From: Ministeria vibrans ATCC 50519
Lineage: Eukaryota > Protista > Filasterea
Length of the DNA: 49,169 nucleotides
Direction: 5' to 3'
Assembly (NCBI GenBank): GCA_943704425.1
Contig: CALSCP010000335.1
Coordinates: forward strand, 1 to 49,169
Numbering within the stretch: the first letter of the stretch is position 1; the number at the start of each line of letters is the position of its first letter. The notes beneath the pieces were generated by a model. The model had not been told where the DNA came from and did not search any database. It was given only the letters and a program-made list of their open reading frames with translations. Shown piece after piece: positions 5,391 to 41,710 of the stretch. A program made the translations under genes and the position numbers.

Positions 5391-6636
5391 ATGAGTAATT
5401 TCTTGTTCTTTATGTGGTCGTTTGTCGCGCTGGCACGCACCTTGGCGATTGCAACACACGGCCGCTTGTTTGGTTCGAGAGCAGTAGCAGCAGCAGCAGG
5501 CGCAGTGTCGTCGAGATCCAAAACGACAGCGAACCATCAGCAGAGCAATGGCGCCGAGACGGACGCTGCCGAGGACTACGACGGAGCCTTTATGTACGTA
5601 GCCGAACCCGACCCTCTTGCCGGGCCGTTGGTGGACTTTGCCGTGCTGCCGCTTGCCTACGAGCGGACGGTGTCGTATCGGACGGGAACGGCAGACGGAC
5701 CGTTGGCCTGCATTGCATCAACGGCCCAAGTAGAGCTGTTTGACGAGCGACTGGCGACGGACATGCCCTGTGGCAAGCATGTGTGCACAGCAGACGAGTG
5801 GCGCTGGAAGGGGACGACGGAAGCGAGTGTGGAAGAGCAACTGGACAGCTTAGTGAACCATCTGCGGCCCTGGTTCAACGGATCGCTCTTTCCACTCGCA
5901 CTCGGCGGCGAACACGGCATTCTTCCGCCGCTCCTTCGTGCCGCGCAGCTGGAACACCCGCTGCTTGAAGGCTCGCTCTCAAAGCTCACATTGGTCCAAA
6001 TTGATGCACATTGCGACTTGCGCGATACTTATGACGGCGAACGCTACTCGCACGCGTGTGCCCTGCGTCGCGCACTTGATCTTGGCGTTGCGCACTTGTA
6101 CCAGTGCGGCATGCGAGCCGTGTCGCGCGAAGAGCACGAGTACGCCGCACAGGATGCGCGCGTGACAACACTCTCTGCGCGCACCATGCACAGCCATCCC
6201 GAGGCGTTTGCCGCGTTTCTCAACACGCTGCGCTCCCTCAAGGGACCCGTTCACCTGACACTTGACATTGATGGTCTCGATGCGCCCCTGGTGCCCCATA
6301 CTGGCACGCCCGTGTACGCTGAGCGCGCATGTGAGCCTGATCCCACTGATTTGTTGTTCTTGTTCTTTTGACAGGCCTGGCGGGCTCACCTACTGGCAAG
6401 CAGTGGACGTAATTGAAGCGGTGTTTTCAGCGCCTCTTGCTCAAGTGATCTCGGCCGACATCAACGAGATCGTGCCTGGCCGTGAGACGGTTGTGACGCA
6501 GTTCACGTCGGCGATGCTTGCTGCACAGGTGTTTGCAAGTCACCTGGTCGCTCGCGCAGAGGGTCGCTGGACCTCAACCGGTGCTGGCGCCGGACGAGTA
6601 CGTGCGCCAACGCACGGTGTGTATTTCACTCAATAG
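5391..6636 (+). CDS. Agmatinase / ureohydrolase family (one intron 6314-6374)
   Basis: Motifs LGGEHG, QIDAHCDLRD, YSHAC, TLDIDGLD, TGTPV|PGGL and DINE. The N-terminus looks like a targeting peptide. Confidence 0.9.
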
Positions 6637-6973: not shown

Positions 6974-7267
6974 AATGTTTACAAAAGTTTTCTCATAACT
7001 GGTGCCGTGCGTGCAACCACTACTCTGGATCAACTGTTAGTGGTATGTTATGGTTATGATACCCAGTTAATAAACCAGGCTCGGATCATTTGGTTCACAC
7101 TGGTTTATAGCCTGAACTAATAACTGGAGAATCTAATCTGCGACGGGGGCGCCACGACTCCACCAACGACAGCGACCCCAGGCATTGGCTACAGTCACTC
7201 TTTATTACTACTTTGCTCAGCCAATAGTCGACGCACTAACCGGATCGTGTTCGGCGTAACCGGAACG

Positions 7268-8042
7268 TCAGGAAGTTAGCGCTTTTAATAGTAGTTGCGA
7301 TTCCTCTTCTTCTGAGAAATCAAGATCATCTTCATCAGTACGGTACTTTCCAGGACGGTAAGTGAGCTGCCCGATAGTGATATGGGCTTTTTGCTCAATT
7401 ACGAGGTGTAGTTTGTCGACATCGGCACGTGCTGGATCGAGGGCCGCAGGGTTTGCACCGTTTGTTTGAAAGGACTGCAGCCACATGGTGAAGTGCCAGT
7501 GAATCCACTCTTTTCCTATCGTCGTGCCCTTATCGTTAAAGGCCCGCTTTGTCTTGCTTGATGAGAGTCCGACAGGATAAATATTGGCTGGCAACGTAAG
7601 TGCCGACATCGTATCGGCGAATTGATCGCCATAGCACTGGGTGAAAGCGAGGACAATCATACGGTTTTGATTAATGAGAGGCTTAAGGAGAATTTGCAGC
7701 CCCTTGAAGAAGCGAATGCCCCCCCAGAGGAGGCTGGCTGTCCAACGGATGACGGAACTTGGAAGCTCCCTGGCGAAAAACTCGCCGTTAGAGCTCTTGA
7801 TGCCGTGACCAGACACGGAGAACACAAAGGGCACGCTGATGTCGAGATTCTTGGCCTGCTCAACAAAGGCTTCGAGCGTGTCGTTGAGTTCGCTTAGACG
7901 CCCACTACGTATAGCGTATAGCGCCGCCGCCGCCTTCTTTGTACGGGTAAAACTCGTCGTTGCAAAACAGCTTGACGCGCATTGCAAGCTCGTCGCCTTT
8001 ATGTGGGCTCTGGGGGCAGTACTGAACCACAAATGGCTTCAT
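7268..8042 (-). pseudogene. Caspase/metacaspase-like (clan CD peptidase fold) gene frameshifted by a 7-bp tandem duplication
   Basis: ATG 8042 gives MKPFVVQYCPQSPHKGDELAMR... Removing one GTATAGC copy (7909-7922) yields one 255-aa ORF with FVFSVSGHG and VLAFTQCYG, a His-Gly/Cys dyad pattern. Confidence 0.55.
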
Positions 8043-8797
8043 AATTGTGCTACTCTAAGAATTTGGAAAATTTTGATGAACGCAGTTATCGATACAACAA
8101 TCCATACTTAACTCGTTCTGCAATCGCAATCCCATAACCACTCTACACCCTCTGCGCAACACGGCACGTTGTAACATGCGCCGACAGAAAATCGAACAAC
8201 CGCAAACAAAAAAAAAAAGGAAATAAGCGAGAATGCCAGCCACGCAAAATCCCCGCCCTCTCACGCCCCGCCACCATGCCATTTGCACAACTAGTAACAC
8301 ACACAACCCATACAACCCCTGCGCAACACGGCACGCTGTGGCATGCGCCAATTGGAAATTTCGTGAGCAAGAGGTAAAGGCAAAAGCGCACGCAAACCCC
8401 TTGTATTTGCACCCCAGGGCATATACACCCCCTGGATCCAATAGTGGAGAAAAAATTGACTTACTGTTGAGTATTAAAGAAAATTGAAAATTGTGAAATG
8501 TGAATTTTGAATTGAAGTTGTGACTGTTGAGAGTCTTATGTTGGCTTAAATCAATAAAAGTCACTTGAAAGTTTATTTAAATAAATAAAAATCTTGACTC
8601 TTCCACAAAACCCCTCAAAAACCTCTTCAACGATCGATTTGACTGAAACGAACACAGATGCCCGTGTCAGTTATAGGCTTCCACAGTGCCTTGAAAAATG
8701 ATTTGTGTGGCTGTTAACATGGAATTAGAGTGAAAATCGAGAGAAACAAAAACGAAACACTCATTTTCATAACATACCACCTGTGACGCCTGAAATC

Positions 8798-8932: not shown

Positions 8933-9053
8933 AACTCTTGAACTCTTGAACTCTTGAACTCTTGAACTCTCTCTTGAACTCTTGATCTCTCTCTCTCTTG
9001 AACTCTCTCTCTCTCTTGATCTCTCTCTCTCTCTTGAACTCTCTCTTGAACTC
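8798..9053. repeat. Compound microsatellite (CT)n/(CTCTTGAA)n
   Basis: Directly visible tandem repeats. Confidence 0.9.
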
Positions 9054-9074
9054 TAAATCATATGTGTATTGCAG

Positions 9075-10491
9075 TGTTCATCTCGGAGATGGAACACGCA
9101 CAGGAGCTCAAACGTCGCTCGACTTTGTTGCGCCGCACAAAGACACTCTCGCTTGTGCCGGGCGGAAAGGTAAGTTAATATTGTTCTCTACTTCACTTTG
9201 TCCAACCCTCGTGTTTCTTCTTTTTTTTTTTTTTGAAGACTCGAGTGCAGAGCGATGCGATGATTGAGCGACAGATGCCGTTGAAGCAAGGTTCTGTGTT
9301 GAAGCAGGCGGGTGAAGGAGGCAAATGGCGACGGAAGTACATTGCGCTGTTGCCCAGTGCGCTCGAGTACTACGCCAGCGAGAGTGACTATCTGCAAGCG
9401 GAAGGGGGTAAACGCATTGAACTGGTCAGTTGCACTGTCAAAGTACCCGTGACGCGTGCGTCCCAGGCAGCAGCGGCTGCTGCCGCGTCAGCAGCTGCGT
9501 CTGCCGCCGCCACAGCCGACGATGCCACTCCTCACACTCCCCAGCACTCGTCCACGAGGAATTCACTGCCCCCAACTCCCATCACTGCGTCCTCCCCGAT
9601 CTCCGCCGACTCTAACAACCACACGCACACCACTAACAGCAACAACAAGCGAGTCTCAATGAGCATGGCGTCCGTCGACGACGACGATGACTCCGACACC
9701 GACTCATTCCCTCTCCCCGTCCCCATCAGCTCCCCCTCCTCCTCCACCACCACCTCCTCCGCCCGTCTTGGCAAAGGCTTCTTCTTCTCCATCATCAGCA
9801 TGCGGGGCACCAGCTGGAGCTTTCAGACTGGCTCGCAGGCCGAAAACGACATGTGGATCGAGGCCATCAACAAACAAATCTACATCTCTCTCACCGCAAA
9901 CACAAGCGACAAAACCAGAGTATGCGTTGCTGTTTTGAGAGACTACCTCGTCTCCCTGAGATATATTTTTACCTCCGTCTTTCCGTTTTAGGCGTCTTCT
10001 GGTGGCACCGCATCGGTGCAAGTGTCGCAGAAGAACCCGGAGCACATGAAAACGATTCAGGCAGTGCCGGGCAACGACAAGTGCGCCGACTGCGGTGCGC
10101 CCAATCCCGTCTGGGCCTCCATCAACTTGGGCACTCTTATATGCATTGCCTGCTCTGGCATCCATCGCAATCTGGGGGTGCACATTTCCCGTGTGCGCTC
10201 TCTCAATCTCGACGATCTCCCCGATGAAGTGATTCGCGTCATGTGCTACATTGGTAATGATGTTGCCAATGCTGTTTGGGAGGCAGTTGTGCCCCCAGAG
10301 GTCCCCAAACCCTCCCAGGAGTCAACTCGGTACAAATATTGTGAATCAAACCTGCCTCTCGTCTGCTCACCTTCTTTTTTTGCGCCTGCGTGTGTATTAG
10401 TGAGATGAAAGAGGCTTGGTGTCGTGCAAAATATGTTGAAAAGAAGTTTTTGGACTTTGCCAAACTCGATGCGGGTCTCAGTATTGGAAAG
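9075..10491 (+). CDS. AGAP/centaurin-gamma-like split-PH + ArfGAP protein (multi-exon; both ends unresolved)
   Basis: PH domain [13 protein letters not shown]...WRRKYIAL...[11 protein letters not shown] with a long low-complexity insert, then [14 protein letters not shown]. ArfGAP zinc finger CADC...[31 protein letters not shown], followed by KEAWCRAKY. Confidence 0.8.
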
Positions 10492-19977: not shown

Positions 19978-19986
19978 AAAAAAAAA
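19978..19986 (-). terminator. Pol III-type T9 terminator after the tRNA 5' half
   Basis: Nine T on the minus strand beginning 2 nt after G37. Confidence 0.6.
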
Positions 19987-19988
19987 CA

Positions 19989-20105
19989 CCGGAGGGCAGC
20001 GCCTTATCCATTGGGCCATGGTCGCTGACAACAAACGGAAAGCGGCCACTGGGACTCGAACCCGTTACTTTTCAAAAAAGACGTTCTGAAAAAGAGTCTC
20101 TGCCT
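19989..20105 (-). tRNA. Circularly permuted, intron-containing tRNA-Arg(CCG)
   Basis: Minus strand order: 3' half (20105-20093 + 20063-20041, with a 29-nt intron at 20092-20064), a 15-nt linker, the 5' half (20025-19989), then TG-T9. Joined: GCGACCA UG GCCC AAUGGAUA AGGC G CUGCC CU CCG GA GGCAG AGACU CUGGG UUCGAGU CCCAG UGGCCGC U (73 nt). Anticodon and T stems are perfect and the acceptor stem has 6/7 pairs. Confidence 0.85.
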
Positions 20106-20135
20106 CACTCGAGGGGGCAAATTCCCTTAAAATGG

Positions 20136-20142
20136 TATATAA
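20136..20142 (-). promoter_or_regulatory. Putative TATA element upstream of the permuted tRNA
   Basis: TTATATA about 31-37 nt upstream of the first tRNA nucleotide (A38). Confidence 0.35.
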
Positions 20143-20484
20143 CGGTATTTTGATATCCAAATGCTTTTTCTTAGCTGTACCGTCAGGACAAAGAGGACAG
20201 TATGCTTATACAACTAATGCCGGTGCCCTTTGGAAATGCCCGCGTGCTATTCGCCACATTAATTTTGCCTTTTTTGTTTTGAATTTTTTCTTTGTTGCAT
20301 CATCTTCTACTCCGTAGGCGGTGGCGGAGTAAAAGTATGAACTACAGGTCTACAGAGCAATCCACGGGAAAGGGTTCCACCTTATTCTTTATTTTTCAGT
20401 TTCGATCTGACAAAGAAAGCCATGAACCAAAAATCATTAAAATGATTAAATCAAATAGACTTACTTACTTTTGAACTTTGAGGC

Positions 20485-35900: not shown

Positions 35901-38249
35901 ATTGTGTCATTTGCATGTCGGGTGCGCTGCCCGACGTGCCTATGGCACTCATTGCGTTGGGTCTGCACTCAAGCAGTCAAACAGGCCGCGCATGCGTGCT
36001 TGGGTACCGTTCTCAAAAGGCGGGTGCTCGGCGCCACGACCGCATACAGGCGGACCAACGTGCGTACAGCAAGTTACGACTCATTTTTGGCGACACCTCG
36101 TCCTTTTTCGGTGCACCTCGCATTGCGTCCAAGTTTCATATCCGATCCTGTGGCCACATGATGCACGTCAGCTGTGCGGCCACCTACATTGAGTCGCTGC
36201 ATCCCGAAGCGGTCCCCAACAGCTCGCTGAGCGTCGAATTTCGCTGTCCACTCTGTCGTCGTGTCGCCAACATGTACATTCCCATTGTGCCATCGTGTGG
36301 AATCGGTGCCGATCCTCGCACAACTGCACCCACCTCAACAACAACAACAACCAACAACAACAACAGCAACAGCAACAACGCCCGTCGAAGCGTCATCAAC
36401 TACAGCGGACGGTATTGGTAGTAGCGAGAGGCGTCGTTCGCCGGTGTTTGTGATGGAGTCGTCCTCTGGCGAGTCCGTCACGGTGTTTCGGAAGCGCAGC
36501 TTGAGCGGCCGTTCCCTGCGCGACACGCCATCACCTCGTGCTGCGGCGCGCCTCGCCTCCGTCCAGAATGACCGGCTGAGCATGTATCGACACTTGAAGA
36601 AGGGCACCCAAGACTTTGTCTCGAGTGTGGCCAGCCAGATCGGCTCGATTGAACCAGTGGTGTCGTTGCTCGAGCTGTTGCGCACGGTGGCGGTTGATGC
36701 AAGTGTGGCCGCGACGTCGCTCGAGAATTGCTCGCCTATTGCCATGCGCACCTACCGCGCACTGGTGTACAGTGTCGCCGGTGCGATTCCCGCGGCACTC
36801 GAACAATCGAATCGTCTTGTCGCCCCGTTTGGCCAACGCTTGCATGTCTACGACGAGCTTGTGTTGCAGTACGACCCGAACACACCGACACGTCGCTCCG
36901 AGTCACACCCGCTGACACTCCTCTCGCGCGACCAATCGATCTGTTTCCTCTATCTTTTGCTGCACCCATGCAAGGCCGAGGGTCGCACTGGACCGACGCG
37001 CGACGCAGTACGAGTGCGTGAGTACTTGCGCGGCTGCTTGCGAGCCACCTTGGTGCAGGCGTGCATTGTGGTATTGTCGAACATGACAGAGGATGAGCTC
37101 GCGCGTGTGCGCCTTCAGTCGTTCTGGCAGGCGTATGTGGGAGACGCGATGGAGGTGGACGAGGACGAGGACGACGAGGAGCTGCTGGTTGCTGCACACG
37201 AGCGCAAGTGTGCAATGGTGTTTTCCGAGGTGACGTCGTGGCTCAACATGGCTCAGTTTGTTGGAATGTCGACCAAGACTTCGTCTCTCCGTGAGCATCT
37301 GTCGCGTGCCCATGATGCGGTCGCCACTGCCGAGAAGAAGCCGAGTGCTCTAGCTCAATGGCAGCAGACAACCTCAAAAGCACCAGGCGCAGCTGCAGCA
37401 CTACCAACATCAGCAACAACATCAACAACAACAACAACAACAGCAGCAGCAGCAGCAGCAGGTGTAGAATTGGAGTCGAGTGACGACGATGCGTTGCGCT
37501 TGCGCATTCTGTCTCAATTGGATCGGTTGTGTACGCCTCTATTGCGACTGGCGCTGTGGTACACTCATGTGTTTGTGTCACGGCGAGGGAATGAGCGTGT
37601 TCCACGTCGCGATCGACCTTCGCCGCGTCTTGAGGACGACGTCAACGACACGGCCATCAATTATCTGTTGGCACTTGAGATGGCGCAGGACCCTGCCGGG
37701 GCATGGGATGTGCTGCGACGACGATGGGTTTGTCACGAGTGGCTCTACAGCATGTCGAGTGTGGCGCCCTCCCAGACGTGGGTCATTACGCCCCCTTTGG
37801 CGCTGTACGCCCGTCCGCGACTGCAGAACCTGCCGCGAGTCTACACCGACCTGCACGCGCGCATTGTGGGTGCCCCATGCAATCTGTGTCATGGCGTGCC
37901 CAAACGACCCTGTGTGTGTCTTCTCTGTGGCGCCATTGTGTGCGTGGCGGAGAAATGCTGCACCGTCAATCGACTGGGCGAGCTGACGACGCACTCTCGG
38001 TCCTGTGGTGGAGGCACGGGACTGTTTCTTGAAGTAGAGGCAACTACGGTTCTCATTGTCATTGGCCAGCGGAACTGCATTTGGAATTCACCCTATCTGG
38101 ATGCGCACGGCGAGGAGGACGTCAATCTGGCGCGTGGTCGTCCGCTCTTCCTCGACGAACAGCGCTACCAGTCGCTCGAGACGCAGTGGCTGGAGAGTAG
38201 TCTCAACGAGTCGGTGGGTCGGTGGCACTGGCACACGACGACCATGTGA
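31506..38249 (+). CDS. UBR3: UBR3-like N-degron E3 ubiquitin ligase (multi-exon; apparent frameshift near 36351; start uncertain)
   Basis: UBR box CGFLW..AYRCITCQKSPCTSICADCF..DHTGHDFYMFKSQSGGACDCG, WRRNG, split RING (CVIC...SCGHMMHVSC...FRCPLCRR), and a C-terminal CLLCG...YLDAHGEEDVNLARGRPL domain. Confidence 0.88.
32845..32950. repeat. (TTA)n microsatellite in a UBR3 intron
   Basis: Directly visible. Confidence 0.9.
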
Positions 38250-38337
38250 AAAAGAAGTAGCGAGCGACTGTGTGTGTTGAAAAAGAGAGAGTGAGAGCAA
38301 GTGCGAGAGTATGATGGAAATTGTATGGATTGATAGT

Positions 38338-41710
<3,373 letters not shown>

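What the first reader, a model, noticed from the sequence alone, without database searches (positions are those of the whole stretch)
19989..20105. Circularly permuted tRNA-Arg(CCG) gene in an apparently non-algal eukaryote
Seen: on the minus strand the tRNA 3' half (A38 to U73) precedes a 15-nt linker and then the 5' half (G1 to G37), followed by a T9 run. The halves pair precisely: anticodon stem CUGCC/GGCAG, acceptor GCGACCA/UGGCCGC, and an Arg-typical D-loop AAUGGAUAA. The break is at 37/38, the canonical intron site. The leader ...CGAGUG|A38 pairs with C32-U33-C34 and leaves a 3-nt bulge at the cut, a relaxed BHB. Known: permuted tRNA genes maturing through a circular intermediate were described in Cyanidioschyzon merolae, prasinophyte algae, a chlorarachniophyte nucleomorph and Thermofilum. 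Inference: this genome looks holozoan-like, so it may be an undescribed lineage with a permuted-tRNA system that standard tRNA scans would miss.
Basis: partly seen in the sequence, partly recalled or inferred. Interest (0 to 1): 0.95.

Follow-up and report, generated by a model that had tools for sequence, protein, structure and literature searches.

The report
Permuted, intron-split arginine tRNA gene
An arginine tRNA gene is written back half first and is also interrupted by a small archaeal-style intron; it is one of at least seven such scrambled tRNA genes in a non-photosynthetic relative of animals, whereas such genes were known only from a few algae and one archaeon.

Summary
On the minus strand the order is 3' half (20105-20041), a 15-nt linker, 5' half (20025-19989), then TG and T9. 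However, the 3' half is 65 nt, not 36. It carries a 29-nt insertion in the T stem (50/51) that fits bulge-helix-bulge geometry (2 of 20,000 shuffles do as well). The acceptor stem also has one A4.C69 mismatch. Only after both rearrangements does ARAGORN call a 73-nt tRNA-Arg(CCG).

The locus is not isolated. I verified six more permuted genes on other contigs. Their acceptor stems covary across the linker (7 of 7 pairs). Nucleotide 32 pairs with leader -3 in 6 of 6 genes broken at 37/38. They share an upstream TATA-type element and long T-run terminators with the ordinary tRNA genes.

No other Arg(CCG) gene was found, and CGG makes up 12% of Arg codons.

The assembly has integrin-beta and T-box genes, mitochondrial TGA=Trp and no photosynthesis genes, so the host looks holozoan.

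No RNA evidence could be obtained.

The scan had already noted and followed up permuted tRNA genes at other loci of this genome.

Verdict: a real permuted tRNA gene of a known kind in a new lineage. Expression is unproven.

The parts
20129..20157 (-). Upstream TATA-type promoter-like region, with two candidate elements at 20157-20146 and 20141-20129, about 24-52 nt before A38
   Evidence: A 12-nt motif learned only from 17 ordinary dispersed tRNA genes has the consensus TATAGCACATTT. The best match here scores 7.6, empirical p about 0.04, which is weaker than at five of the six other permuted loci (p 0.004 or lower).
20106..20117 (-). 5' leader. Bases 20110-20108 (GAG) pair with C34-U33-C32, and 20107-20106 (UG) together with A38 form the 3-nt bulge at the 3' cut site
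   Evidence: the pair between nt 32 and leader -3 is present in 6 of 6 permuted genes broken at 37/38, with one covarying case (U-A). The transcription start itself is not known.
20093..20105 (-). 3' half, first exon: A38, anticodon-stem 3' strand (39-43), variable region (44-48), C49-U50
20064..20092 (-). 29-nt BHB-type intron in the T stem (between U50 and G51), containing T5 and T6 runs
   Evidence: bulge CU|U, a central helix of 3 pairs plus a G.A mismatch, bulge AC|G, and an 8-bp outer helix, all in the exact register that restores the T stem. 2 of 20,000 composition-preserving shuffles do as well. ARAGORN calls the tRNA only when this segment is removed.
20041..20063 (-). 3' half, second exon: G51-G53, T loop, T-stem 3' strand, acceptor 3' strand (66-72), discriminator U73; no CCA is encoded
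20026..20040 (-). 15-nt intervening sequence (linker) joining U73 to G1; its longest T run is 3
   Evidence: The Lys(UUU) gene on another contig has the same layout and linker length.
19989..20025 (-). 5' half G1-G37: acceptor 5' strand, Arg-type D arm, anticodon-stem 5' strand, anticodon CCG, G37
19978..19988 (-). 2-nt trailer (UG) followed by the T9 Pol III terminator
   Evidence: Ordinary tRNA genes of this genome end in a median T9 run, and 16 of 18 have a first run of T7 or longer.

Best explanation
This is a circularly permuted nuclear gene for tRNA-Arg(CCG), junction type II (37/38), that also carries a bulge-helix-bulge intron in the T stem at 50/51.

Proposed pathway. RNA polymerase III starts downstream of an upstream TATA-type element. 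It reads the leader, the 3' half with its intron, the 15-nt linker, the 5' half and a 2-nt trailer, and stops at the T9 run. In this precursor the mature tRNA body is already folded, because the linker closes the acceptor stem. The tRNA splicing endonuclease (Sen2/Sen34-type) cuts after G37 and before A38, guided by the anticodon stem, the C32:G(-3) pair and the 3-nt bulge. It also cuts both sides of the T-stem intron at its two 3-nt bulges. The tRNA ligase joins G37 to A38, which makes a circular intermediate, and joins U50 to G51. RNase P and tRNase Z then remove the linker, and CCA is added.

Shown here: the gene anatomy, the fit of both cut sites to the required geometry, the shared flanking signals, six further verified genes of the same kind, and the presence of the endonuclease genes.

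Inferred, not shown: transcription, the order of the steps, the circular intermediate, and aminoacylation.
For: - Reassembling the halves and removing the 29-nt insertion gives a 73-nt cloverleaf that ARAGORN calls tRNA-Arg(CCG). G37 is as expected for an anticodon ending in G36 (my own knowledge).
- The junction model scores 67 bits at this locus. It recovers six other permuted genes at 48-70 bits on six other contigs.
- Across the seven genes, all 7 acceptor-stem pairs spanning the linker show compensatory changes. 95.9% of cells are paired, against 29-56% when the partners are slid, and 0 of 500 shuffles reach the observed covariation.
- The pair between nt 32 and leader -3 is present in 6 of 6 genes and covaries once.
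- The T-stem intron fits BHB geometry in the exact register (2/20,000 shuffles). An independent T-stem intron in the Lys(UUU) gene does too (1/20,000).
- The upstream motif learned from ordinary tRNA genes is found at 5 of 7 permuted loci at p<=0.004 and at this locus at p about 0.04. A T9 run begins 3 nt after G37.
- A search for an Arg-type D arm joined to a CCG anticodon, allowing 2 mismatches, finds only this locus in the genome. No Arg(CCG) appears among the scored standard tRNA hits. CGG is 12% of Arg codons in the window's long ORFs.
- The D arm matches the host's ordinary dispersed Arg(CCU) gene and not the Arg genes in the tight arrays.
- Two endonuclease catalytic-subunit genes are present.
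- The locus is intergenic.
Against:
- At this particular locus the promoter match is weak (p about 0.04). The TATA-like element lacks the conserved C of the motif.
- The acceptor stem has an A4.C69 mismatch.
- The T-stem intron holds T5 and T6 runs that could stop Pol III early. The argument that they are tolerated is indirect: ordinary genes use a median T9 run, and the Lys and C883 genes also have internal T5/T6 runs.
- The junction motif is relaxed: 3 of 4 central pairs and no leader-trailer helix.
- The tRNA census is incomplete. Only 63 of 508 candidates were scored, so a divergent linear Arg(CCG) cannot be fully excluded.
- A tRNA-Arg(UCG) could read CGG by wobble, so this gene need not be essential.
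- No related genome was available, so conservation of this locus across species is untested.
Confidence: 0.75

Rival explanations
1. A decaying or silent copy. The locus descends from a functional permuted tRNA-Arg gene but is no longer expressed or no longer gives a usable tRNA, and CGG is read by tRNA-Arg(UCG) through wobble.
For: This locus has one of the weaker promoter-motif matches among the permuted loci (p about 0.04; only the C491 Arg(ACG) gene is weaker at 0.088). It has an A4.C69 mismatch in the acceptor stem and internal T5 and T6 runs. A second Arg(ACG) copy on C883 has a T-loop insertion that I could not resolve into a normal T loop, so damaged copies may exist in this genome.
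Against: The anticodon and T stems are perfect after processing, the acceptor has only the A4.C69 mismatch and the D stem one (C13.A22); the conserved D- and T-loop bases are intact, and G37 is kept. The BHB register of the intron is exact. The terminator is in place 3 nt after G37. It is the only CCG-anticodon Arg gene found, and CGG codons are used more than AGA and AGG together. Single acceptor mismatches also occur in Gly(CCC).
Confidence: 0.17
2. Foreign DNA or misassembly. The contig, or this junction, comes from a contaminating alga of a lineage already known to have permuted tRNA genes, or the swapped order was created by the assembler.
For: The assembly is a draft of 2,860 contigs. 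I could not link the marker-gene contigs physically to the contigs carrying permuted genes.
Against: No rbcL, psbA or LHC genes were found anywhere in the assembly. The same architecture recurs on seven different contigs of 38-284 kb. The permuted genes share the upstream motif and terminator style of the ordinary tRNA genes. A UBR1/PRT6-type protein encoded in the window is closest to fungal and chordate clusters. Prototheca, a non-photosynthetic green alga, was considered. It is excluded by mitochondrial TGA=Trp and by the integrin-beta and T-box genes.
Confidence: 0.04
3. Inert remnant of a tandem duplication. Two adjacent intron-containing tRNA-Arg copies lost their outer halves, leaving a 3' half next to a 5' half, with no promoter logic and no processing.
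For: Tandem duplication followed by loss of the outer halves is the origin proposed for permuted tRNA genes in the original descriptions (my own knowledge). Tight tandem tRNA arrays do exist in this assembly.
Against: An inert remnant would not be expected to keep a TATA-type element upstream of the 3' half, a T9 run 3 nt after nt 37, the 32:-3 pair, or full cloverleaf complementarity. The array Arg genes have a different D arm. This scenario describes how the gene may have arisen, not what it is now.
Confidence: 0.04

Closest known systems
[quoted passage not shown] 2007, 2013; reviewed in PMC3978253 and PMC3728597)
   Same: The 3' half lies upstream of the 5' half. An intervening sequence joins the acceptor ends. 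No CCA is encoded. An upstream TATA-like element is shared with non-permuted genes, and a T stretch follows the 5' half. The junction is at 37/38 (type II). Some genes carry an extra BHB intron, and 50/51 in the T stem is a recognised processing position there (type III junction). More than one junction position occurs in one genome: here 37/38, and about 20/21 on C2431.
   Different: The host here is a non-photosynthetic, holozoan-like opisthokont, not an alga. The junction motif is relaxed and has no leader-trailer helix at this locus. Internal T5/T6 runs are present. The circular intermediate was demonstrated in C. merolae and is untested here.
Permuted tRNA genes of green algae (Ostreococcus, Micromonas; Auxenochlorella) and of the Bigelowiella natans nucleomorph (Maruyama et al. 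2010, as cited in PMC3978253; preprint PMC12633428)
   Same: Junctions are predominantly type II (37/38), intervening sequences are short (5-16 nt), and the genes were discovered because standard tRNA scans gave an incomplete set.
   Different: All of those hosts are photosynthetic, or are green-algal remnants. In those lineages an extra intron in a permuted gene is rare (one gene in O. lucimarinus). Here two of the seven verified genes carry BHB-fitting T-stem introns, and two others carry extra insertions that I did not resolve.
[quoted passage not shown] 2011, PMC3218864)
   Same: They combine permutation with introns, and a BHB motif sits at the junction.
   Different: That system is archaeal. 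Its junctions are at 59/60, CCA is encoded, and it uses an archaeal promoter and endonuclease. This locus has eukaryotic flanking signals and a eukaryotic Arg-type D arm.
Canonical eukaryotic tRNA intron splicing at 37/38, with its anticodon-intron base pair
   Same: The cut sites are after nt 37 and before nt 38. The 3' site lies in a 3-nt bulge closed by a pair between nt 32 and the base at -3. That pair is present in 6 of 6 permuted genes here, with one covarying case. The importance of this pair for the eukaryotic endonuclease is my own knowledge (Baldi et al. 1992), not tested here.
   Different: The 'intron' here consists of the two free ends of the transcript (trailer plus leader), so ligation circularises the RNA instead of joining two exons of a linear precursor.

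Membership tests
Circularly permuted tRNA gene (criteria from PMC3978253) | The 3' half is encoded upstream of the 5' half on the same strand, and the swapped halves give a complete cloverleaf | tested here: met
   the reassembled 73-mer is called tRNA-Arg(CCG) by ARAGORN once the T-stem intron is also removed
Circularly permuted tRNA gene (criteria from PMC3978253) | A short intervening sequence (1-74 nt) links the 3' end of the acceptor stem to its 5' end, and the two acceptor strands are complementary | tested here: met
   The linker is 15 nt. 6 of 7 pairs form here (A4.C69 mismatch). Across the seven genes all 7 pairs covary, with 95.9% of cells paired.
Circularly permuted tRNA gene (criteria from PMC3978253) | The junction lies at a recognised position (20/21, 37/38, 50/51 or 59/60), and the flanking sequences can form a strict or relaxed BHB motif | tested here: met
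   The junction is at 37/38. There are two 3-nt bulges, 3 of 4 central pairs, and the anticodon stem serves as the outer helix. There is no leader-trailer helix, so this is the relaxed form.
Circularly permuted tRNA gene (criteria from PMC3978253) | A TATA-like element lies within about 50 bp upstream of the 3' half and is shared with the non-permuted tRNA genes | tested here: met
   The motif was learned from ordinary genes. This locus matches at p about 0.04 (weak), and five other permuted loci match at p<=0.004.
Circularly permuted tRNA gene (criteria from PMC3978253) | A T stretch (Pol III terminator) lies just downstream of the 5' half | tested here: met
   A T9 run starts 3 nt after G37. 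Ordinary genes have a median T9 run.
Circularly permuted tRNA gene (criteria from PMC3978253) | No promoter or terminator signal lies inside the transcribed unit between the halves | tested here: inconclusive
   The linker itself has no T run longer than 3. The T-stem intron has T5 and T6 runs. Whether these terminate transcription in this organism is unknown.
Circularly permuted tRNA gene (criteria from PMC3978253) | Maturation through a circular RNA intermediate, with a mature CCA-tailed tRNA detectable | not testable with these tools
Circularly permuted tRNA gene (criteria from PMC3978253) | The gene supplies an anticodon that is otherwise missing from the genome | tested here: met
   It is the only Arg-type D arm joined to a CCG anticodon in the genome, and no Arg(CCG) appears among the scored standard hits. 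Caveat: only 63 of 508 candidates were scored.
BHB-type non-canonical tRNA intron (archaeal / C. merolae style) | Two 3-nt bulges separated by a 4-bp central helix and flanked by at least one further helix, with cleavage in each bulge giving the correct exon junction | tested here: met
   bulges CU|U and AC|G, a central helix of 3 pairs plus a G.A mismatch, and an 8-bp outer helix (relaxed HBh' form). 2 of 20,000 shuffles do as well. The predicted cuts restore a perfect 5-bp T stem.
BHB-type non-canonical tRNA intron (archaeal / C. merolae style) | The host has a splicing endonuclease able to cut outside the 37/38 position | not testable with these tools
   Two catalytic-domain genes are present. 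Their substrate range cannot be read from sequence.

The most novel reading that the evidence does not exclude
A unicellular relative of animals runs a full 'disrupted tRNA' system of the kind thought to be confined to a few algae and archaea. The system includes permuted genes with at least two junction positions and BHB introns inside the T stem. Every dispersed host gene found so far for the CGN arginine box (ACG, UCG, CCG) is permuted. If these genes are expressed, permuted tRNA genes are not an algal peculiarity. Either they go back to early eukaryotes, or they arise repeatedly wherever tRNA genes are driven by an upstream TATA-type promoter and not by the internal A and B boxes. The opisthokont splicing endonuclease would also have to cut BHB substrates at non-canonical positions in vivo.
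Probability: 0.6. Interest if true: 0.85.

Novelty: new member of a known kind. Interest (0 to 1): 0.72.

Why it matters
Permuted tRNA genes have been reported only from red and green unicellular algae, a green-algal nucleomorph and one crenarchaeon (PMC3978253, PMC13578239, PMC12633428). The held literature contains no report from opisthokonts.

Finding them, together with T-stem BHB introns, in a heterotrophic holozoan-like protist would widen their distribution to the animal-fungal side of the eukaryote tree.

It would also reopen the question of whether such genes are ancestral or convergent.

It would offer a test of the idea that promoter architecture (upstream TATA versus internal boxes) is what permits tRNA genes to be scrambled.

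On the practical side, tRNA annotation of such genomes with standard tools is incomplete and could be misread as codon reassignment or tRNA loss.

Tried and rejected
- **Reads.** No read-level test of expression, junctions or assembly was therefore possible.
- **Mis-specified pattern.** One search used a 6-nt gap where 5 nt is correct, so its result means nothing. One search is the corrected search.
- **Narrow first scan.** The first reversed-order pattern was too narrow in D-loop spacing and missed the focal locus. It was widened.
- **Alignment.** A plain MAFFT alignment of the junctions (A1) misaligned the acceptor strands and was discarded. A two-sequence seed model followed by structural realignment replaced it.
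- **Standard models.** Rfam at gathering and at permissive thresholds gives no tRNA hit at the locus.
- **Taxonomy by protein neighbours.** This gave little. The agmatinase-like ORF hits marine metagenomes and Poseidoniales archaea. HSP90 is too conserved to resolve placement. PNGase neighbours are scattered at 35-45% identity. The look-up of encoding contigs had no record. The RHD family was not found, but the tool's own control was uninformative.
- **Environmental relatives.** Of 59 metagenome contigs with a B box followed closely by an Arg-type D arm, 56 are ordinary tandem arrays, 2 are cut off by the contig end, and 1 is a permuted Arg(CCU). None is a relative of this locus.
- **Prototheca-like host.** This idea, prompted, was rejected on mitochondrial TGA=Trp, integrin-beta and T-box.
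- **Second motif site.** A strong promoter-motif site at window 8054 (minus strand) has nothing tRNA-like downstream and lies inside an ORF.
- **Letter allowance.** The new model candidates could not be inspected, and I did not try to obtain them in another way.

Full report
**1. What is at the coordinates**

Reading the minus strand gives the following order:
- A segment that begins with A38 and the 3' strand of the anticodon stem and ends with the 3' acceptor strand and U73 (20105-20041).
- A 15-nt linker (20040-20026).
- A 37-nt segment from G1 to G37 with an Arg-type D arm and anticodon CCG (20025-19989).
- TG, then nine T (19986-19978).

First, the upstream segment is 65 nt, not about 36. 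Between U50 and G51 there is a 29-nt insertion (20092-20064) that splits the 5' strand of the T stem. Second, the acceptor stem has an A4.C69 mismatch.

In one search I rebuilt the product from window coordinates. With the halves swapped but the insertion kept, ARAGORN finds nothing. With the insertion removed, the 73-mer is called tRNA-Arg(CCG). So the locus needs two processing events, not one. ARAGORN and Rfam see no tRNA anywhere in the window, even at permissive thresholds over this stretch. The locus is intergenic.

**2. The insertion is a BHB-type intron**

I placed the cut sites where the T stem requires them. The insertion then shows:
- a 3-nt bulge CU|U;
- a central helix of three Watson-Crick pairs plus one G.A mismatch;
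- a second 3-nt bulge AC|G;
- an 8-bp helix closing a 6-nt loop.

Cleavage after the second base of each bulge gives exactly the mature T stem. Only 2 of 20,000 composition-preserving shuffles of the intron reach this. A Lys(UUU) gene on another contig has an independent 44-nt insertion at 51/52 with the same geometry: four central pairs and a 6-bp outer helix (1 of 20,000). Position 50/51 is a recognised processing site in Cyanidioschyzon merolae.

**3. The junction**

At the 37/38 break the leader bases -3 to -5 pair with C32, U33 and C34, and UG|A38 and GG|U form the two bulges. The anticodon stem is the outer helix. There is no leader-trailer helix here, so the motif is the relaxed form.

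Across the six genes broken at 37/38 that I could read, nt 32 pairs with leader -3 in every case. Five are C-G and one is U-A, which is a compensatory change. The central helix has 2-4 pairs (standard or G-U) in each of the six genes. This pair corresponds to the anticodon-intron pair that the eukaryotic endonuclease is known to need for the 3' cut (my own knowledge, not tested here).

**4. It is one of a family**

I scanned the whole 29.7-Mb assembly for a B box followed closely by an A box, which is the reverse of the normal order. I then rotated each hit and ran ARAGORN. This gave:
- Lys(UUU) on C437
- Arg(ACG) on C491
- Gly(UCC) on C2280
- Gly(CCC) on C2647
- a gene on C2431 that reads as Arg(UCG) broken in the D loop, with a further short insertion beside the anticodon

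A pattern search added a second Arg(ACG) on C883, whose T loop is interrupted.

I built a covariance model of the junction, bootstrapped from two genes of identical layout and realigned structurally. It scores these seven loci at 48-70 bits. It also finds five further candidates outside the tandem clusters: C1897, two on C1769, C1993 and C2350.

On the structural alignment of the seven genes, all seven acceptor pairs that span the linker show changes on both sides. 95.9% of cells are paired, against 29-56% when partners are slid, and no shuffle out of 500 reaches the observed covariation. That alignment was fitted to the model, which favours the structure. The slid controls and the independent ARAGORN calls answer that concern.

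**5. Transcription signals**

Seventeen ordinary dispersed tRNA genes of this genome share an upstream element about 30-70 nt before the gene, with consensus TATAGCACATTT. This motif was learned from those genes alone. I scored the permuted loci against random windows:

| Locus | Empirical p |
|---|---|
| Arg(UCG) C2431 | below 0.0002 |
| Gly(UCC) C2280 | 0.0006 |
| Gly(CCC) C2647 | 0.0006 |
| Arg(ACG) C883 | 0.002 |
| Lys(UUU) C437 | 0.0036 |
| Arg(CCG), focal locus | 0.04 |
| Arg(ACG) C491 | 0.088 |

So the focal locus has a recognisable but weaker element. Its TATA-like box differs from that of the Lys gene at the conserved C.

Ordinary genes end in a median T9 run, and 16 of 18 have a first run of T7 or longer. 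The two with a short first run have a longer one just behind it. The permuted genes have T7-T15 runs starting 3-13 nt after nt 37. This makes it plausible that the internal T5 and T6 runs of the focal gene are read through. The Lys and C883 genes also carry internal T6 and T5 runs. This remains an inference.

**6. Is there another Arg(CCG)?**

A search for the Arg-type D arm joined to a CCG anticodon, allowing two mismatches, finds only this locus. The other hits are the two Arg(ACG) genes and an ordinary intron-containing Arg(CCU) (one search was mis-specified and is void). None of the standard tRNA hits I could tabulate is Arg(CCG). However, only 63 of 508 candidates were scored, so the census is incomplete.

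CGG is 12% of Arg codons in the window's long ORFs, more than AGA and AGG together. The D arm of the permuted Arg genes matches the ordinary dispersed Arg(CCU) gene and not the Arg genes found in tight arrays.

**7. The host**

- The assembly has no rbcL, psbA or LHC genes.
- Contig C1523 is a 55.9-kb, 24% GC mitochondrial genome. Its long ORFs contain 14 and 23 in-frame TGA codons against one TGG each.
- There are three strong integrin-beta genes and two T-box loci. As far as I know, that combination occurs only in Holozoa.
- A UBR1/PRT6-type protein of the window is nearest to fungal and chordate clusters.
- HSP90 and PNGase neighbours did not resolve the placement further.
- Two endonuclease catalytic-subunit genes are present, one with the N-terminal domain, as expected for Sen2 and Sen34.

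I did not identify the species.

**8. What is known**

The 2014 review lists 34 permuted genes, all in unicellular algae or Thermofilum pendens, and gives the criteria used in the membership table. A 2026 review and a 2025 preprint add only algae. No paper in the held library joins permuted tRNA genes with Holozoa or opisthokonts. The library is not complete, so 'first' is a statement about what I could search.

Other agents of this scan have followed up the Lys, Gly(CCC) and Arg(ACG) loci of the same genome and read them the same way. I reached those loci independently by pattern search and re-tested them.

**9. Verdict**

The sequence evidence that this is a real permuted tRNA-Arg(CCG) gene with an extra T-stem intron is strong. 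The evidence that it belongs to the host's own tRNA gene set is good. Its expression and the circular intermediate are inferred by analogy with the algal systems.

The features that lower confidence for this gene in particular are the weak promoter match, the A.C mismatch and the internal T runs.

It is a new member of a known kind. Its interest lies in the lineage, and in the combination of permutation with non-canonical BHB introns in a relative of animals.

Noticed in passing
G000 contigs C585 (about 36035-36900), C2093 (about 9024-9400), C2083 (about 7140-8070 and 38150-38540); loci L003, L002, L089, L090: There are tight tandem arrays of 4-9 standard tRNA genes with 25-60 nt spacers and no T-run terminators between them. 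They mix A34 anticodons (Pro-AGG, Arg-ACG) with G34 ones that are unusual for a nucleus (Val-GAC, Arg-GCG, Ser-GGA). Their Arg genes have a different D arm from the host's dispersed Arg genes. An ORF on C2083 has a weak, sub-threshold match to the NCLDV major capsid protein (E 6e-4), among compact ATG-started ORFs at 40% GC. This may be giant-virus-derived DNA.
   Followed up: partly
G000:C2431:223936-224002 (minus); locus L055: A permuted gene reads as tRNA-Arg(UCG) with the break in the D loop (about 20/21) rather than at 37/38. It has a further short insertion next to the anticodon in its upstream part, and it has the best promoter-motif match of all the loci.
   Followed up: partly
G000:C883:103519-103648 (plus); locus L091:220-349: A second permuted Arg(ACG) gene has exons identical to the C491 copy but a roughly 50-nt insertion inside the T loop. 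I could not find cut sites that restore a normal 7-nt T loop, so it may be a damaged paralogue or may carry more than one intron.
   Followed up: partly
G000:C1897:10815-10878 (+), C1769:25770-25836 (-), C1769:29549-29615 (+), C1993:66459-66554 (+), C2350:47625-47722 (-): These are further hits of the permuted-junction covariance model at 23-43 bits, outside the tandem clusters.
   Followed up: no
L117:1009-1064 (+), metagenome contig VFQN01002046.1 (32 kb, 41% GC): This was the only true permuted gene among 59 metagenome contigs with a B box followed closely by an Arg-type D arm. It is an Arg(CCU) with an 8-nt linker and a break near 37/38. The organism is unknown.
   Followed up: partly
G000:C1523 (55,949 bp); loci L057-L059: This is the mitochondrial genome: 24% GC, TGA read as Trp (14 and 23 in-frame TGA against 1 TGG in two long ORFs), about 30 tRNA genes, and one open frame of about 2,000 codons under that code.
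   Followed up: partly
window 5391-6371 (+): An agmatinase/arginase-family ORF has its best matches, at 50-58% identity, in marine metagenome proteins, several of them named as Poseidoniales (marine group II) archaea. This could reflect gene transfer or merely database composition.
   Followed up: no
G000:C1793:34874-34983; locus L086: An ordinary-order tRNA-Thr(CGU) gene has a 29-nt intron that ARAGORN places one position off the canonical site. It also has an unusually long 23-nt trailer before its T9 terminator. It may be another non-canonical intron.
   Followed up: no
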